DNA of 64,000 nt, taken from sequence record NC_005083.2; one strand, written 5' to 3'. The position numbers were made by a program, and so were the translations under genes. Positions 43,708-57,845 of this stretch are shown here, piece after piece. Positions within the stretch are counted from its first letter, which is position 1; every line of letters starts with the position of its first letter. Below the pieces are notes generated by a model. The model was not told the DNA's origin and searched no databases. It saw only the letters and a list, made by a program, of their open reading frames with translations.

Positions 43708-44232
43708 CTATTTGCGCCCTTTACGATTTGCCTTATTTGCTTTTCTTTTTGCTCTACGCAACTCTTTGCGTTTTGCGATTTTGTCTGCACGTCTAACTGC
43801 ATCATAATCCGCAGCACACGACGCAGCAAACGCATCAGGCTTGAAAACGGGTTCTTGGCCCACGTATCCCAAGATAGTGCCCTTAGCTTCGTTATACGCA
43901 ACGTGTGAACGATGGGATGGGTCTGGGTTGATGTCAACGTGAACTTCAAACCCACGAGTACCACACATTGGCTTAACACGCAGAGCAGTTTCACCTGCTT
44001 TATAGACTTCATTCATCAAACGACTACGAATACCATCTTTACACGACATGTACGCTGGTTCAGTTTCGATAGATTTGAATACTTGAGCGCCTTTGCTACC
44101 CTCAAGGTGAATGATGATTACAGTAGCGTAACTAATCATATCACTCTTACGCTTGCTATCACACCCAACATAAATCGTACTGTTCGGATGACTGTTATTG
44201 ATAGCTGTTTCAATTGCTTCCCAATCGAACAT
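43708..44232 (-). CDS. RNase H-like protein (DUF458/YkuK family)
   Basis: IYVGCDS, RLMNEV, EVHVDIN, KPDAFAASCAAD. Confidence 0.8.
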   Translation of the reverse strand: MFDWEAIETAINNSHPNSTIYVGCDSKRKSDMISYATVIIIHLEGSKGAQVFKSIETEPAYMSCKDGIRSRLMNEVYKAGETALRVKPMCGTRGFEVHVDINPDPSHRSHVAYNEAKGTILGYVGQEPVFKPDAFAASCAADYDAVRRADKIAKRKELRRAKRKANKANRKGRK

Positions 44233-44282
44233 TTTCACCTCTGTACAAAAAAGGGCAGCACAATGCCGCCCTTATCACTTAT

Positions 44283-45719
44283 TTAAAAGCTGTAGCGTTC
44301 AACGCCTACAGTTTTCAGCATGATCTTGACTGGCTCAAGCTCACCACCCAACAGTGAAGTCAGGATAGATGGGCTACAACCCGATACCAGTGCAGTACCC
44401 GCTTCGCCAGCTTTAACCGGAACGTTGCCAAGACGACCACGAATGTTCCAGAAGACTAGTTGTGGCATTTCATAGCCAGCACGTGCGTACATAGCTTTGA
44501 TTGCGTCGAAGTTTGCACGTTCGCCACGACCGTACCAGCCACCACCAGTATTTGCTTGGTCGAATTCCATGTCGCTCATGATAAGCAACTTAGTCGGCAT
44601 TTCTTCTTGTGAAAGATTTGCACGTTTCGCACGTTCTAACAGAACGTTGAAGCACTTACCGATGTTTGTGCTCATGTCTTCGCCTGATCGATTCATGTTG
44701 TCAAGACGCTCTTTTAGTGAGCTACCGCGTAACTGGTGGAAGTGCGGATCGCTTGAGAACGAAATGAACTGATCTTTGAAGATGCCTTCATTGCGTTCAG
44801 CAACATAGATGCCAAGAGACATTGCAACTTGCTTACAAGTCACACCTGAACGATCTGCACCTGCGTTGATTGGCGTGCTCATAGAGCCAGACACGTCAAC
44901 AACTGGGATGATGCGCTCATCAGAGCCTTCCATGTAGTTCGGCAGGGCTTTCCATTGCTCGTTCGCTACAGACGCATTACCATGACTAACGCTCTTAACG
45001 ACATCATATGGGAACAAGGCACCAGCGTTGATCTTCGCTTCACCTTTTTGAAGCGACTCGATGTAGCTTGTGTAACGAACAGAAGCGTTACGACCGAATG
45101 CTTTTTGATAACGAGCAGACGCTACAGATGGCAACTTACCGAAGTCGATTGCATCCCATTCTTGCGCACACATCTTCTGTTCAACAGTGTCAGACAAAAG
45201 TGCTAGAATCTTACGCCACTGCTTCGCAGTTACACCAAGAGACTTGATTGTGCGCTTGAACACATGACCGTTTTTGCTGTTCTCGCGTGGGAACCACTTC
45301 GCAGCGAGACCGTTCTTGTCGTTTACAATCGCATTTGACCACAGTGTGATCGCGTCTTTTTCAAGTCTTGTGCCGAAAGCAGAAATCAAGTCGTCGAAGC
45401 GACCTAGTTCTGGAATTTTCGACATTACAGCACGAGCTACGTCAGGCTGCTCATTACAAAGCTTAGTGAATAGAGTACGGAAAGTACCACGTTCACCCGC
45501 ACCACCGCGAACATCACGAGACCACAAAAGAATGCGTGTCGCTAGTTCTGGGTTTTCTGCAAACGCACGACCGAACAGTGTTTTAGACTGATCGTTACCA
45601 CGCATAGCAGCAATACCGAAGAACAAGTTTAGACACTCGTTACCTGAAGTGCTGTGAGTAACTGCACCGTTTGCTGTACGTGAATCGTTTGATTGCATAG
45701 CGTTCATAAATGCTGACAT
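44283..45719 (-). CDS. DUF2828-family TROVE-like plus vWA protein (Ro60-like)
   Basis: RDVRGGAGER, GRFDDL, AAKWFPRE, VDVSGSM, SDMEFD, LVFWN. Confidence 0.85.
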   Translation of the reverse strand: MSAFMNAMQSNDSRTANGAVTHSTSGNECLNLFFGIAAMRGNDQSKTLFGRAFAENPELATRILLWSRDVRGGAGERGTFRTLFTKLCNEQPDVARAVMSKIPELGRFDDLISAFGTRLEKDAITLWSNAIVNDKNGLAAKWFPRENSKNGHVFKRTIKSLGVTAKQWRKILALLSDTVEQKMCAQEWDAIDFGKLPSVASARYQKAFGRNASVRYTSYIESLQKGEAKINAGALFPYDVVKSVSHGNASVANEQWKALPNYMEGSDERIIPVVDVSGSMSTPINAGADRSGVTCKQVAMSLGIYVAERNEGIFKDQFISFSSDPHFHQLRGSSLKERLDNMNRSGEDMSTNIGKCFNVLLERAKRANLSQEEMPTKLLIMSDMEFDQANTGGGWYGRGERANFDAIKAMYARAGYEMPQLVFWNIRGRLGNVPVKAGEAGTALVSGCSPSILTSLLGGELEPVKIMLKTVGVERYSF

Positions 45720-45754
45720 TGTTTATTCCTCATATTAAATTGCTGTAAAATGTC
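45715..45754 (-). promoter_or_regulatory. CAGCAA-motif hairpin sequestering RBS and start codon
   Basis: gacatt-tta-cagcaa...gagga...aATGtc on minus strand. Confidence 0.7.
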
Positions 45755-45810
45755 GTTTTGATGTGATGATTATACACGGATTTGAACCCGTGTAAACACT
45801 TTTTTCAATT

Positions 45811-48878: not shown

Positions 48879-49125
48879 AGACATTCGAGAATTGTTTTAT
48901 CGTCTTTCCTTAAATCTCAATTGACTATCTCGATGTTTCTCATCAAGAGAATACCCATGATTCGGCATGAGACCTATTTCGTTTAACAGTACGAACACCG
49001 TCTTAATGGTCATTTCCTACCACGAGAATGCGACAGGCTCACGTCATCACTGAGAAAGCAGCTAGTGCGCCTCATTACTATTAAAGTTTGCTTCTTTGAT
49101 TAGTAATAGTTGCTGTACAATGTCT
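48879..49125 (-). ncRNA. CAGCAA-motif structured RNA (~250 nt)
   Basis: agacatt/aatgtct closing stem; gta-cagcaa; attacta/tagtaat. Confidence 0.6.
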
Positions 49126-51154: not shown

Positions 51155-51367
51155 AGACAATACCGAAGTGTTTTTTCGTCTTTGACATGAATCGGAGTTG
51201 ACTATCTTGTTATTCACAACAAGCAAATATCGTCTGTTTCAGCGACGCGCCTATCTGACTATTTCTAGACAGAGAGAATCTTTCCTTTCAAGCTGCACCG
51301 AAGCACCGCCCAGGTTAAGATCATTACCATTTTAAGTAAGATTTTAATTTGTTGCTGTATATTGTCT
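51155..51367 (-). ncRNA. CAGCAA-motif structured RNA (~210 nt)
   Basis: agacaat/attgtct closing stem; ata-cagcaa. Confidence 0.6.
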
Positions 51368-51982: not shown

Positions 51983-52095
51983 GAGTGTTATTACTTGCGT
52001 CGTCCAGACCAGAGATACCAACTCTGAAAGGGAATCGAACCCCAAACATTTCTTTTCGTAAGAAGAATATTAGTAATTGTTTGCTGAAAACACTC
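51983..52095 (-). ncRNA. CAGCAA-motif RNA enclosing a T-arm
   Basis: gagtgtt/aacactc; tt-cagcaa; attact/agtaat; gggTTCGAttccc. Confidence 0.65.
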
Positions 52096-52652: not shown

Positions 52653-52664
52653 TTTAAATTAAAC

Positions 52665-52722
52665 AGCAATCCTTTTCTCTTTTTCCAAATAAAAGTTTTG
52701 TATTGTTTGCTGAAAGATTGCT
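52665..52722 (-). ncRNA. short CAGCAA-motif RNA
   Basis: agcaatc/gattgct; ttt-cagcaa. Confidence 0.6.
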
Positions 52723-52730
52723 TAATTCTG

Positions 52731-55300: not shown

Positions 55301-55416
55301 TGGTAGTCGGGGCTGGATTCGAACCAGCGACCACGTGCTTAACAGGCAATTGAAGGAGTGCTGGAGCGATACTTGTCAGTATCATTCTTCGTGCTCTACC
55401 ACTGAGCTACCCGACT
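55301..55416 (-). ncRNA. tRNA-mimic RNA (GACA hairpin, CAGCAC)
   Basis: acceptor, D arm, T arm, ACCA; gatact-GACA-agtatc-gctc-CAGCAC. Confidence 0.8.
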
Positions 55417-56966: not shown

Positions 56967-57090
56967 TGGTGGAGAGTGATGGATTTGAACCACCGACCAA
57001 AAGATTTACCTAGTTATTAAGGTTTGCAGCATGAATGCTTGTCAGTATTCTTTAACATTCTTTTGCTCTACCAGACTGAGCTAACTCTCC
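56967..57090 (-). ncRNA. tRNA-mimic RNA (GACA hairpin, CTGCAA)
   Basis: ggagagt/actctcc-ACCA; gaatact-GACA-agcattc-atg-CTGCAA. Confidence 0.8.
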
Positions 57091-57096
57091 ATAATT

Positions 57097-57214
57097 TGAG
57101 GGTGAAGTACAGGACTCGAACCTGCGACCTCCGGCGTGCATGTAAATGCAGAATGAAATCTTATCAGACTTCGTTTTTTGAGCCGGCATTCTAACCAACT
57201 GAACTAACTTCACC
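57097..57214 (-). ncRNA. tRNA-mimic RNA on an Asp-like shell (GATA hairpin, CTGCAT)
   Basis: ggtgaag/cttcacc; ccggc/gccgg; gaagtct-GATA-agatttc-att-CTGCAT. Confidence 0.8.
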
Positions 57215-57326: not shown

Positions 57327-57460
57327 TATAGTTGCGGGTGCAGGATTCGAACCTACATCACGATCTTATGAATGATATGCGAAATTGATTGCCGTACAGA
57401 TTCTTATCAGAATCAGTTTTGTGCTACGTGTGCTACCACTTACACCAACCCGCAACTATA
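57327..57460 (-). ncRNA. tRNA-mimic RNA (GATA hairpin, CGGCAA), extended acceptor
   Basis: 13-15 bp terminal stem; gattct-GATA-agaatc-tgta-CGGCAA; aggTTCGAatcct. Confidence 0.8.
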
Positions 57461-57718: not shown

Positions 57719-57845
57719 TGGTCGAGTGTAACGGAATCGAACCGTTCCCACGATCTCCCTATGATATGCGTAAATTGGTTGCTGAATATAATCATGTCTG
57801 ATTACAGTATGCTACGTGTGCTGCCACTACACCAACACTCGACCA
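57719..57845 (-). ncRNA. tRNA-mimic RNA (GACA hairpin, CAGCAA), paralog of 57327
   Basis: taatca-GACA-tgatta-tatt-CAGCAA; aacggTTCGAttccgtt. Confidence 0.8.

What the first reader, a model, noticed from the sequence alone, without database searches (positions are those of the whole stretch)
44283..45754. Ro60-like (DUF2828) gene whose start codon is locked in a CAGCAA-motif hairpin
Seen: the leader reads gacatt-tta-CAGCAA-tttaatat-GAGGA-ataaac-aATGtc, so the 6-nt strand before the motif pairs with the start codon and the RBS lies in the loop. This is the same helix + 3 nt + CAGCAA geometry as the ncRNAs in the tRNA cluster. The promoter spacer just upstream also contains a T-arm-like hairpin (acacgg-gttcaaat-ccgtgt). 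Known: TROVE + vWA is the Ro60/Rsr architecture, and RNA-binding proteins often repress their own mRNA through a ligand mimic. Inference: translational autoregulation, which would identify this protein as the ligand of the motif RNAs.
Basis: partly seen in the sequence, partly recalled or inferred. Interest (0 to 1): 0.88.

Follow-up and report, generated by a model that had tools for sequence, protein, structure and literature searches.

The report
Ro60-like phage gene with RNA-mimic leader
A gene of Vibrio phage KVP40 for a Ro60-like RNA-binding protein carries, over its own ribosome-binding site and start codon, a small copy of a previously undescribed hairpin-plus-UACAGCAA RNA that sits beside this gene family in hundreds of phages, which suggests that the protein binds these RNAs and throttles its own translation.

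Summary
The window is Vibrio phage KVP40; the gene is KVP40.0300 (DUF2828 + DUF7788). The 6-bp helix is weak (-3.5 kcal/mol, no better than shuffles), so "locked" overstates it.

An AlphaFold model matches Ro60/Rsr structures over its full length. No sequence search detects TROVE.

The "helix + 2-3 nt + CAGCAA" RNAs are a real family. A covariance model built only from distant phages recovers the four tRNA-cluster RNAs and this leader as the five best hits in the window. It also gives 71/71 and 60/60 same-strand hits next to DUF2828 genes in viral contigs and in bacterial genome/MAG contigs. Cultured Listeria, Staphylococcus, Campylobacter, E. coli and mycobacterial phages carry the RNAs too.

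The leader element is a conserved island in 13 KVP40-like leaders. Its helix shows compensatory variants, and the 3' arm always lies on the start codon or beside the Shine-Dalgarno.

The protein-RNA partnership is well supported. Autorepression is plausible but untested. The "T-arm" in the promoter spacer is not supported.

Short forms resemble Dictyostelium Class I RNAs, and some long forms resemble YrlA. I judge this a new variant of the Ro60-Y RNA kind.

The parts
44283..45719 (-). KVP40.0300 coding sequence (478 aa): a Ro60-like HEAT-repeat ring plus a vWA domain with a MIDAS motif
   Evidence: ORF. Pfam DUF2828 (9e-29) and DUF7788 (1e-45); PHROG 850 'RNA-binding protein'. AlphaFold model pLDDT 85, pTM 0.86. 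Foldseek PDB top 12 hits are all Ro60/Rsr/TROVE, E 1e-8 to 1e-5, TM 0.5-0.64. D275, S277, S279, T351 and D383 are invariant in 33 homologues.
45749..45754 (-). 5' arm of the leader helix (GACATT)
   Evidence: G, A, A and T at arm positions 1, 2, 4 and 5 are invariant in all 13 clade leaders; the arm reads GACATT in nine, GAAATT in three and GACATA in one, each with a matching change in the 3' arm.
45740..45748 (-). Spacer tta plus CAGCAA (UUACAGCAA), the family's single-stranded signature
   Evidence: It aligns to UUACAGCAA of model R1. Relatives have CAGCAA, CAGCAT or CAGCAC.
45727..45731 (-). Shine-Dalgarno GAGGA inside the loop
45715..45720 (-). 3' arm of the leader helix (AATGTC), covering position -1 and the ATG (45719-45717) plus TC
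   Evidence: Mean base-pair probability of the helix is 0.91 in local context, but the MFE is only -3.5 kcal/mol. Locus L094 has GACATA/TATGTC, a compensatory change at the only non-coding position of this arm.
45769..45796 (-). Sigma-70-type promoter TTTACA-16-TATAAT, with a 7-bp dyad TACACGG/CCGTGTA in and around the spacer
   Evidence: The dyad is kept with different sequences in relatives, but the T-loop-like sequence is not.
44251..44273 (-). Intrinsic terminator directly after the stop codon, making the gene a monocistronic unit
   Evidence: 10-bp stem with 6 GC pairs, followed by a T run.
52662..52724 (-). Motif RNA D (about 58 nt): AGCAATCT-tt-CAGCAA...GGATTGCT-GU
   Evidence: R1 41.3 bits, E = 7e-8. 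Fold -10.7 kcal/mol, z = -2.0. Stem covaries in VH7D (AGTAATCT/GGATTACT) and 1.081.O (AGAATGT/GCATTCT). RF01414 gives a full-length match of 27.4 bits.
51983..52095 (-). Motif RNA C (113 nt): GAGTGTT-tt-CAGCAA...AACACTC-AGU, with an internal ggggttcgattccc hairpin
   Evidence: R1 matches the 5' part at 21.4 bits, E = 0.006. No Rfam tRNA or YrlA match.
51155..51367 (-). Motif RNA B (213 nt): AGACAATA-ta-CAGCAA...TATTGTCT-GU
   Evidence: R1 14.1 bits.
48879..49125 (-). Motif RNA A (247 nt): AGACATT-gta-CAGCAA...AATGTCT-GU. Its stem has the same sequence as the leader helix.
   Evidence: R1 13.3 bits. A terminator-like hairpin follows at about 48850.

Best explanation
KVP40.0300 encodes a divergent Ro60-type protein: a HEAT-repeat ring plus a vWA/MIDAS domain. 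Its RNA partners are a family of phage-encoded Y-RNA-like molecules. Each has a terminal helix joining its 5' and 3' ends, followed on the 5' side by 2-3 nt and the single-stranded signature (U)UACAGCAA.

KVP40 makes four such RNAs (A-D) from its tRNA cluster. The gene's own 5' UTR carries a 40-nt miniature of the same module. Its 3' helix strand is position -1 to +5 of the start codon, and its loop holds the Shine-Dalgarno.

On its own the helix is too weak to block ribosomes. When free protein exceeds the free A-D RNAs, it would bind the leader copy, clamp the helix and occlude the initiation region. Protein synthesis would then be set by the amount of unbound RNA partner, which is autogenous translational repression by ligand mimicry.

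Shown here: the fold, the RNA family, the gene-RNA linkage, and the conservation and compensatory variation of the leader helix. Inferred: that this protein is the binder, and that binding represses translation.
For: Fold: the top 12 Foldseek PDB hits are all Ro60/Rsr/TROVE over the full length, on a confident model. The MIDAS residues are invariant.

RNA family and linkage:
- A descriptor search gave 28 sense and 0 antisense hits in 1.29 Mb of distant DUF2828 loci, against a mean of 1.4 for permuted hexamers.
- With a looser descriptor, 49 non-redundant hits lie within 1 kb of the gene, against 4.8 for decoys and 5 antisense.
- Model R1, trained on 23 RNAs from distant phages only, gave 71/71 same-strand hits in viral loci and 60/60 in an independent set of GTDB genome/MAG loci. 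Nearly all of the latter lie within a few hundred nt of the gene.
- In seven cultured phages R1 gave 18 hits at E <= 1, 17 of them same-strand. Five of the seven (Listeria LMTA-94, Staphylococcus 6ec, Campylobacter CP81, E. coli phage Andreotti, mycobacteriophage Nicholas) have hits at E < 0.01.
- In the training alignment the closing helix is 97.9% paired and 6 of 7 pairs show compensatory changes.

Leader as mimic:
- R1 ranks the leader third in the whole window, behind RNAs D and C (18.3 bits, E about 0.04). It also hits the leaders of L090 (30.5 bits) and VH7D (25.9 bits).
- The block from -9 to +5 around the motif averages 89% conserved against 55-57% in the flanks, in 13 leaders spanning 58-100% protein identity.
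- Helix variants are GACATT/AATGTC, GACATA/TATGTC, GAAATT/AATTTC and AGAAAT/ATTTCT. The 3' arm always lies on the start codon or directly after the Shine-Dalgarno.
- The leader arm has the same sequence as the stem of a free RNA in the same phage: AGACATT in KVP40 and AGAAATT in L092.
- Other lineages place a motif RNA 2-15 nt before the Shine-Dalgarno.
- The gene has its own promoter and terminator.
Against: - No binding or expression data exist.
- The leader helix is weak and no better than shuffles. In 4 of 13 leaders, other folds compete with it.
- The 3' arm is largely fixed by the Met-Ser codons, so most of its conservation is uninformative.
- The compensatory evidence rests on a few lineages, and D479 and L092 may represent one evolutionary event.
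- L089 (60% identity), L098 (56%) and most homologues at 55% or less have no motif overlapping the initiation region. In many lineages the RNAs lie downstream of the gene, so autoregulation is not a general property of the family.
- D484 lost the leader to a homing-endonuclease insertion and the gene is apparently still intact.
- R1 E-values are rough, and its training set was chosen with a descriptor that required a stem.
Confidence: 0.55

Rival explanations
1. The leader element is simply one more motif RNA placed upstream of the gene, as in many other lineages, and compacted against the coding sequence. Its role would be RNP assembly in cis or RNA processing, not translational repression. 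Excising the element would cut off the Shine-Dalgarno and start codon, so any control would act through mRNA cleavage or stability rather than by blocking ribosomes. Protein binding might even stabilise the message.
For: Motif RNAs commonly lie directly 5' of the gene on the same strand (L054, L069, L077, L078, L132, L135, L138, L153) or directly 3' of it (L004-L027, L043, L047 and others). This suggests co-transcription as the primary reason for adjacency. L153 has a 40-nt hairpin of the same size that does not overlap the Shine-Dalgarno.
Against: In the KVP40 clade the free RNAs are 3-7 kb away in the tRNA cluster, yet the leader copy is kept. When the helix sequence changes, the 3' arm moves but stays on the initiation region. 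An operator model predicts this; a mere neighbour does not. A 19-nt loop carrying the Shine-Dalgarno is shorter than in any free family member.
Confidence: 0.25
2. The UACAGCAA hairpins, including the leader, are recognised by a different factor, such as another phage or host RNA-binding protein or a ribonuclease. The DUF2828 protein would only be co-regulated with them or act on them indirectly.
For: In Dictyostelium, the only protein shown to bind a Class I RNA directly is an RRM protein (CIBP/Rnp1A). That RNA has the same helix-plus-CUUACAGCAA design (PMC7919456; preprint 10.1101/2020.04.05.026054). Nothing here shows a physical contact.
Against: The linkage is to the DUF2828 gene specifically, across phages of Proteobacteria, Firmicutes, Actinobacteria and Campylobacter whose other neighbouring genes differ. 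The one neighbour tested, the PF04308 gene, is confined to the KVP40 clade. The protein has the fold of a known Y-RNA binder.
Confidence: 0.12
3. The leader resemblance is a coincidence, or a DNA-level feature such as promoter-proximal sequence or an operator for a DNA-binding protein, and has no RNA function.
For: The hexamer is common, short complements are frequent, the hairpin is not thermodynamically exceptional, and the 3' arm is coding.
Against: The element is the third-best hit in 128 kb to a model trained elsewhere. It forms a conserved island amid variable flanks. It shows compensatory variants and recurs in the leaders of L090 and VH7D as significant model hits.
Confidence: 0.05

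Closest known systems
Ro60 (Rsr) with Y RNAs / YrlA in bacteria and phages (Chen et al. 2014, PMC4201824; Thermus phage phiLo Ro60 with Yrl1/Yrl2, PMC12135203)
   Same: The protein is a ring of helical repeats plus a vWA/MIDAS domain. The partner RNAs are encoded within a few hundred nt to a few kb on the same strand, often among tRNAs. Each RNA has a helix joining its 5' and 3' ends with a conserved motif next to it. Some long forms carry a tRNA-like module and match the YrlA model over its full length (E 4e-5 to 7e-5).
   Different: There is no detectable TROVE sequence signature. The RNA signature is (U)UACAGCAA immediately 3' of the 5' helix strand, not GNCGAAN0-1G or GGUCCGA. Many RNAs are minimal forms of 50-65 nt with no tRNA-like part. 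YrlA scores stay below Rfam's threshold (39 against 69 bits). I found no report of a Ro60 mRNA leader that mimics a Y RNA.
Dictyostelium Class I RNAs (Rfam RF01414; Kjellin et al. 2021, PMC7919456)
   Same: Both begin with a 5' G that opens a 6-7-bp terminal helix, followed directly by CUUACAGCAA(U), then an A/U-rich variable loop, the 3' helix strand and CUG(U), for a total of about 55-60 nt. Compare the RF01414 consensus printed with the R1 consensus. RF01414 gives full-length matches exactly on the phage RNAs in five places (22.3-28.2 bits).
   Different: All scores are below the Rfam threshold of 41.5 bits. Class I RNAs are eukaryotic, are transcribed from a DUSE promoter, and are reported as unique to dictyostelids. 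Their proven binder is an RRM protein. Whether Dictyostelium has a DUF2828 protein, or whether the pull-down protein DDB_G0281243 is one, could not be checked here.
Autogenous translational operators that mimic the protein's main RNA ligand (established knowledge: E. coli thrS, ribosomal-protein operons, T4 gp32, gp43 and RegA)
   Same: An RNA-binding protein's own initiation region carries a small copy of its normal ligand, so surplus protein would shut off its own synthesis.
   Different: Here the ligand would be a Y-like noncoding RNA and the protein a Ro60-type ring. Repression has not been measured.

Membership tests
Ro60 / Rsr (TROVE + vWA) | Ring of HEAT-like repeats followed by a vWA domain (three-dimensional architecture) | tested here: met
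   AlphaFold model with pLDDT 85 and pTM 0.86. The top 12 Foldseek PDB hits are Ro60/Rsr/TROVE (1yvr, 2i91, 1yvp, 9nen, 2nvo, 9l5y, 9kop), aligned over 511-574 columns, TM 0.5-0.64.
Ro60 / Rsr (TROVE + vWA) | Sequence match to the TROVE domain | tested here: not met
   Pfam reports DUF2828 + DUF7788 and no TROVE at E <= 0.1. A 33-sequence profile reaches PDB TROVE chains only at E = 0.28, over 40 residues at the start of the vWA domain.
Ro60 / Rsr (TROVE + vWA) | MIDAS motif (DxSxS...T...D) in the vWA domain | tested here: met
   D275, S277, S279, T351 and D383 are invariant in alignment A1.
Ro60 / Rsr (TROVE + vWA) | Partner noncoding RNA encoded nearby on the same strand | tested here: met
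   71/71, 60/60 and 17/18 model hits lie on the gene's strand, mostly within 1 kb of the gene (distances).
Ro60 / Rsr (TROVE + vWA) | Protein binds the RNA helix and motif | not testable with these tools
   Needs EMSA, RIP or CLIP, or a structure of the complex.
YrlA / Y RNA (RF02553) | Score at or above Rfam's gathering threshold (69 bits) | tested here: not met
   Best scores are 39.1 and 38.2 bits, full length, on L067 and L054. In the window, one sub-threshold partial match (29.8 bits, model positions 27-81, 57065-57129) lies on the long tRNA-like genes, not on a motif RNA. RNA C has no match.
YrlA / Y RNA (RF02553) | Conserved GNCGAAN0-1G motif | not tested
   No search for GNCGAA was run. 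The conserved signature seen in alignment A2 and in the R1 consensus is UUACAGCAA instead.
YrlA / Y RNA (RF02553) | tRNA-like module (T arm, D arm, acceptor-like stem) inside the RNA | tested here: inconclusive
   Present in some 115-130-nt forms (L067:9307-9407 and L054:9815-9925). Absent from the 50-65-nt forms. KVP40 RNA C has only a T-arm-like hairpin.
Dictyostelium Class I RNA (RF01414) | 5' G, short terminal helix, adjacent 11-nt motif (T, C, C, A, A fixed at positions 3, 6, 9, 10, 11), length 42-65 nt, 3' CUGU | tested here: met
   The R1 consensus is AGGuUcC-UUACAGCAA...GgAaCCU-G, and the short forms are 49-68 nt. KVP40 RNAs A, B and D end with C + UGU. Motif description from PMC7919456.
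Dictyostelium Class I RNA (RF01414) | Score at or above Rfam's gathering threshold (41.5 bits) | tested here: not met
   Scores are 27.4, 22.3, 28.2, 26.3 and 24.9 bits, all full-length and all exactly on the predicted RNAs.
Dictyostelium Class I RNA (RF01414) | DUSE promoter about 60 nt upstream; dictyostelid host | tested here: not met
   These are phage genes embedded in tRNA clusters or in DUF2828 transcription units.
Autogenous translational operator by ligand mimicry | Operator overlaps the Shine-Dalgarno or start codon of the regulator's own mRNA | tested here: met
   The 3' arm spans -1 to +5 and the Shine-Dalgarno lies in the loop. In the variants the arm abuts the Shine-Dalgarno.
Autogenous translational operator by ligand mimicry | Operator resembles the protein's main RNA ligand | tested here: met
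   The leader is the third-best R1 hit in the window. Its helix has the same sequence as the stem of RNA A. This is conditional on the RNAs being the protein's ligand.
Autogenous translational operator by ligand mimicry | Protein-dependent repression of translation | not testable with these tools
   Needs reporter fusions and toeprinting.

The most novel reading that the evidence does not exclude
The DUF2828 protein and the helix-UACAGCAA RNAs form a second, ancient Ro/Y-type ribonucleoprotein, found in a very large number of phages. The Dictyostelium Class I RNAs, thought to be unique to social amoebae and lacking a known mechanism, would be the eukaryotic members of the same RNA family. Eukaryotic DUF2828 proteins would be their conserved partner, possibly including the uncharacterised pull-down protein DDB_G0281243. 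The KVP40 leader would then be the first example of a Ro-type protein that titrates its own synthesis against its Y-like RNAs.
Probability: 0.3. Interest if true: 0.92.

Novelty: new variant of a known kind. Interest (0 to 1): 0.8.

Why it matters
DUF2828/DUF7788 is a large family with no assigned function. It has 6177 clusters at 50% identity and is present in 710 of 50,697 deposited phage genomes. These include Felix-O1-like coliphages, Listeria P100-like phages, staphylococcal phages, Campylobacter phages and mycobacteriophages.

This work gives the family three things:
- A fold: Ro60.
- A candidate ligand: an RNA family absent from Rfam and, as far as the searched literature shows, undescribed.
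- A testable regulatory circuit.

It widens the Ro60-Y RNA paradigm to a second protein lineage with a different RNA signature. It supplies tractable laboratory systems, namely E. coli K-12 with a Felixounavirus and Vibrio natriegens with phage nt-1.

It also raises a concrete hypothesis for the long-unexplained Class I RNAs of Dictyostelium. On the practical side, several small "hypothetical protein" ORFs annotated over these RNAs are probably not genes.

Tried and rejected
- **Rfam at gathering thresholds** found only tRNAs in the window.
- **Counting CAGCAA or looking for any 6-bp partner** is uninformative. The hexamer is common, and about 40% of its sites find a partner by chance.
- **Thermodynamics of the leader hairpin alone** does not distinguish it from shuffles.
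- **The "T-arm" reading of the promoter-spacer hairpin** was rejected. Relatives keep a dyad (acggg/cccgt, cgctt/aagcg, acac/gtgt) but not GGTTCAAATCC. Only three promoters in the window matched my strict pattern, so I could not say whether such dyads are general.
- **RNA C as a YrlA or tRNA-like RNA** has no Rfam support.
- **A sequence profile against the PDB** gave only repeat artefacts and E = 0.28 to TROVE chains; the fold search was needed.
- **The downstream PF04308 RNase-H-like gene as a general partner** was rejected, because it is confined to the KVP40-like clade.
- **The Dictyostelium pull-down protein DDB_G0281243.** I could not find out what it is. The 2011 paper is not held, and the supplements of the 2021 paper do not mention it.
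- **An alternative 3' partner for the leader arm** inside the coding sequence (AGTGTC at 45637-45632) is conserved, but most likely because of coding constraint.
Full report
**Identity of the locus.** The window is Vibrio phage KVP40 (NC_005083.2), bases 124001-188000; window position 44000 corresponds to record position 168000 at 100% identity. The gene is KVP40.0300, 44283-45719 on the minus strand, 478 aa. GenBank annotates it as a hypothetical protein and RefSeq as "RNA-binding protein". Pfam finds DUF2828 (9e-29) and DUF7788 (1e-45), and PHROGs places it in family 850, "RNA-binding protein". The gene has its own strong sigma-70-type promoter, TTTACA-16-TATAAT at 45796-45769. An intrinsic terminator at 44273-44251 follows the stop codon directly.

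**The observation.** GACATT (45754-45749) is followed by tta, CAGCAA (45745-45740), tttaatat, GAGGA (45731-45727), ataaac and AATGTC (45720-45715). The ATG is at 45719-45717. The two 6-mers are perfect complements, so the start codon sits in the 3' strand and the Shine-Dalgarno in the loop.

Taken alone this is weak evidence:
- CAGCAA occurs 65 times in the window, against about 46 expected.
- About 40% of those sites find some 6-bp complement within 320 nt.
- The hairpin's free energy is -3.5 kcal/mol, no better than 42 of 200 shuffles.

"Locked" is therefore too strong. The helix would need a bound factor to compete with a ribosome.

**The protein.** An AlphaFold model built on 33 homologues is confident (pLDDT 85, pTM 0.86). 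In a Foldseek search of the PDB, the first 12 hits are all Ro60-type proteins: Xenopus and human Ro60, Deinococcus Rsr, Thermus phage phiLo Ro60 and another TROVE crystal structure. They align over 511-574 columns with E values of 1e-8 to 1e-5 and TM scores of 0.5-0.64. Isolated vWA domains follow lower in the list. The MIDAS residues (DxSxS...T...D) are invariant. By sequence, the link to TROVE is invisible. The protein is thus Ro60-like in architecture, but a separate sequence family.

The family is very large. It has 6177 clusters at 50% identity at E <= 1e-3. Homologues occur in 710 deposited phage genomes of many hosts, and mycobacteriophage annotators already call them "Ro-like RNA binding protein".

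**The motif RNAs are real.** On the transcribed strand of the KVP40 tRNA cluster, four intergenic sequences share one design. Each starts with a G-initiated 5' strand, then 2-3 nt, then CAGCAA and a variable body. Each ends with the complementary 3' strand finishing in C, followed by UGU or AGU:
- RNA A, 49125-48879
- RNA B, 51367-51155
- RNA C, 52095-51983
- RNA D, 52722-52665

All four are kept in relatives, and the stem of RNA D covaries: AGCAATCT/GGATTGCT in KVP40, AGTAATCT/GGATTACT in VH7D and AGAATGT/GCATTCT in 1.081.O.

I then scanned 78 IMG/VR contigs encoding DUF2828 homologues of 41-55% identity with a strict descriptor. It gave 28 hits on the gene's strand and none on the other strand. 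Permuted hexamers gave 1.4 on average; only the frame-shifted ACAGCA scored high. With a looser descriptor, 49 non-redundant hits lie within 1 kb of the gene, against 4.8 for decoys and 5 on the antisense strand. In all, 49 of the 78 loci have at least one hit that close.

**A model trained elsewhere finds the KVP40 leader.** I built covariance model R1 from 23 short RNAs (52-68 nt), all taken from those distant contigs and none from KVP40-like phages. In that alignment the closing helix is 97.9% paired, and 6 of its 7 pairs show changes on both sides. Sliding the partner columns drops pairing to 27-54%. One caveat applies: the sequences were picked with a descriptor that required a stem.

Searched against the whole window with filters off, R1's five best hits are:
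- RNA D: 41.3 bits, E = 7e-8
- RNA C: 21.4 bits
- the DUF2828 leader, 45757-45711: 18.3 bits, E about 0.04
- RNA B: 14.1 bits
- RNA A: 13.3 bits

This is. Across other data sets the pattern holds:
- In 71 viral loci (1.2 Mb), all 71 hits at E <= 0.1 are on the gene's strand. They include the leaders of L090 (30.5 bits) and VH7D (25.9 bits).
- In an independent set of 80 loci from GTDB genomes and MAGs (31-49% identity), all 60 hits are on the gene's strand. Almost all lie within a few hundred nt upstream or downstream of the gene.
- In seven cultured phages, 17 of 18 hits at E <= 1 are on the gene's strand. Listeria phage LMTA-94 has two RNAs directly upstream of the gene. Staphylococcus phage 6ec has three directly downstream. 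Campylobacter phage CP81 has two directly upstream. E. coli phage Andreotti has three or four among the tRNAs just downstream. Mycobacteriophage Nicholas has one downstream.

This pattern of gene-RNA adjacency on one strand is the same argument that paired Ro60 with YrlA (PMC4201824).

**The leader in relatives.** Among 16 phages and contigs whose protein is 56-100% identical to KVP40's, 13 carry the element. The block from -9 to +5 relative to the motif averages 89% conserved, against 55-57% on either side. The sequence between the -10 box and the helix, and the loop, both vary freely.

Most of these leaders have GACATT/AATGTC. The 3' arm is largely dictated by the Met-Ser codons, so this conservation says little by itself. 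The informative cases are the exceptions:
- L094 has GACATA/TATGTC, a compensatory change at position -1, the only non-coding base of the 3' arm.
- L096 has GAAATT/AATTTC, L092 has GAAAT/ATTTC and D479 has AGAAAT/ATTTCT. In these the 5' arm has changed, and its partner is a new 3' arm directly after the Shine-Dalgarno.

In every variant the helix still covers part of the ribosome-binding region. In 9 of 13 leaders it is the dominant predicted local structure, with base-pair probabilities of 0.56-0.95, although the free energy is only about -3 to -5 kcal/mol.

The leader arm also has the same sequence as the stem of a free RNA in the same genome. In KVP40, the leader's GACATT matches the AGACATT stem of RNA A. 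In L092, the leader's GAAATT matches the AGAAATTG stem of a 240-nt RNA.

Against a general role, several facts stand out:
- L089 and L098, and most homologues at 55% identity or less, have no motif in the last 110 nt before the start.
- D484 lost its leader to a homing-endonuclease insertion.
- In many lineages the RNAs lie downstream of the gene.

On the other hand, several unrelated lineages place a motif RNA 2-15 nt before the Shine-Dalgarno: L054, L078, L132, L135, L138, L170, and L153, which has a 40-nt hairpin.

**Most likely mechanism.** The protein is a Ro60-type ring whose ligands are these Y-like RNAs. The leader is a minimal copy of the ligand laid over the initiation region. Surplus protein would bind it, stabilise an otherwise weak helix and block initiation. 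The A-D RNAs would compete for the protein and relieve the block.

The fold, the RNA family, the linkage and the comparative behaviour of the leader are shown here. Binding and repression are inferred. I put about 0.8 on the protein-RNA partnership and about 0.5-0.55 on the full autoregulatory model.

There are three rivals:
- The leader is just a neighbouring motif RNA compacted against the gene, acting through processing or cis-assembly.
- A different factor reads the motif.
- The resemblance is coincidental or a DNA-level feature.

**Comparison with known systems.** The closest system is Ro60 with Y RNAs or YrlA. The protein architecture, the same-strand adjacency, the terminal helix with an adjacent conserved motif, and the association with tRNA genes all match. 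Two 115-130-nt family members match the YrlA model over its full length at E of 4e-5 to 7e-5. They contain a T arm, an acceptor-like hairpin and a D arm between the two helix strands.

The differences are:
- The protein family has no TROVE sequence signature.
- The RNA signature is UACAGCAA, not GNCGAAN0-1G or the CGAA bulge.
- Minimal forms of 50-65 nt are abundant.
- Rfam thresholds are not reached.

Unexpectedly, the short forms have the design of Dictyostelium Class I RNAs. The Rfam consensus GaUcuC-CUUACAGCAAU...GagAuC-UG and the phage consensus AGGuUcC-UUACAGCAA...GgAaCCU-G share several features. These are the 5' G, the helix length, the nine-base motif at the same position, the A/U-rich loop, the overall length and the 3' UG.

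RF01414 produced full-length matches exactly on the predicted phage RNAs in five places, scoring 22-28 bits. Four of these came from searches made after the idea was formed. All are below the 41.5-bit threshold, so I do not file the phage RNAs as members of that family.

Class I RNAs are reported as confined to dictyostelids. Pull-downs with one of them recovered an RRM protein, two nucleotide-metabolism enzymes and an uncharacterised protein, DDB_G0281243. I could not determine whether that protein, or any Dictyostelium protein, belongs to DUF2828. The few papers that mention DUF2828 mostly concern plant genes.

**The promoter hairpin.** The dyad TACACGG/CCGTGTA spans the promoter spacer. Relatives keep a dyad at this place but with different sequences, and the T-loop-like GGTTCAAATCC is specific to KVP40. 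It is not a T arm. What it does is unexplained.

**Verdict.** The KVP40 clade has additionally recruited a miniature of that RNA as a probable translational operator.

Noticed in passing
window 55304-55416, 56970-57090, 57101-57213 (-); also about 57720-57845 and about 57330-57455 (-): Five unusually long (about 113-126 nt) tRNA-like genes. Three match the Rfam tRNA model end to end, with a large insert in the anticodon region; the record annotates them as tRNA pseudogenes. Two more, which I read by eye, were not called by ARAGORN or Rfam. Their inserts contain CAGCAA (57784-57779) or CGGCAA followed by a shared ...CGCATATCAT...AGATCGTG... block. R1 gives only weak hits there (9.5-9.6 bits).
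   Followed up: partly
window 45773-45794: A 7-bp dyad (TACACGG/CCGTGTA) spans the promoter spacer of the DUF2828 gene. Relatives keep a dyad at this position but with different sequences. On the + strand it is followed by a T run and scores as terminator-like. Its function is unknown; it might be an operator, or a hairpin in read-through transcripts.
   Followed up: partly
window 43708-44238 (-): The gene immediately downstream (KVP40.0299, PF04308 RNase-H-like / DUF458) is kept next to the DUF2828 gene throughout the KVP40-like clade (15 loci). It is absent from the more distant loci fetched up to that point.
   Followed up: yes
L086 (Vibrio phage D484) 11250-11900: A homing-endonuclease gene is inserted on the opposite strand directly upstream of the DUF2828 gene and has replaced the usual leader. 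The new leader reads ...ggagcttaCAGCAatg, so a CAGCA still abuts the start codon, which may be coincidence.
   Followed up: no
L187 (Campylobacter phage CP81) 2361-2498; also several 30-40-codon 'hypothetical protein' CDS in the tRNA clusters of L082 and L085-L088: Small annotated ORFs overlap the predicted motif RNAs. For example, CP81 ORF140 lies under R1 hits at 2321-2389 and 2393-2476. These ORFs are probably not protein-coding.
   Followed up: no
window 54136 and 54053 (-): Two identical promoter-like copies, TTTACAacgatataaacatcatgTACAAT, lie 83 nt apart inside a 442-nt gap of the tRNA cluster. Each sits within a longer repeated block (aaaaagatgtttacaacgatataaacatcatgtacaat).
   Followed up: no
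window 45632-45637 (-), inside the coding sequence: A second possible partner for the leader's 5' arm (AGTGTC, with one G-U pair) lies about 127 nt downstream and is conserved in VH7D, K566, D525 and F86. It falls in conserved codons (E-C-L), so coding constraint probably explains it. It would, however, give an RNA of about the size of RNA C.
   Followed up: no
L184 (Listeria phage LMTA-94) 5349-6503: A tRNA-splicing ligase (RtcB-type) gene lies about 1.3 kb downstream of the DUF2828 gene. This recalls the rsr-yrlBA-rtcBA arrangement of Salmonella, which I cite from memory and did not check in a paper here.
   Followed up: no
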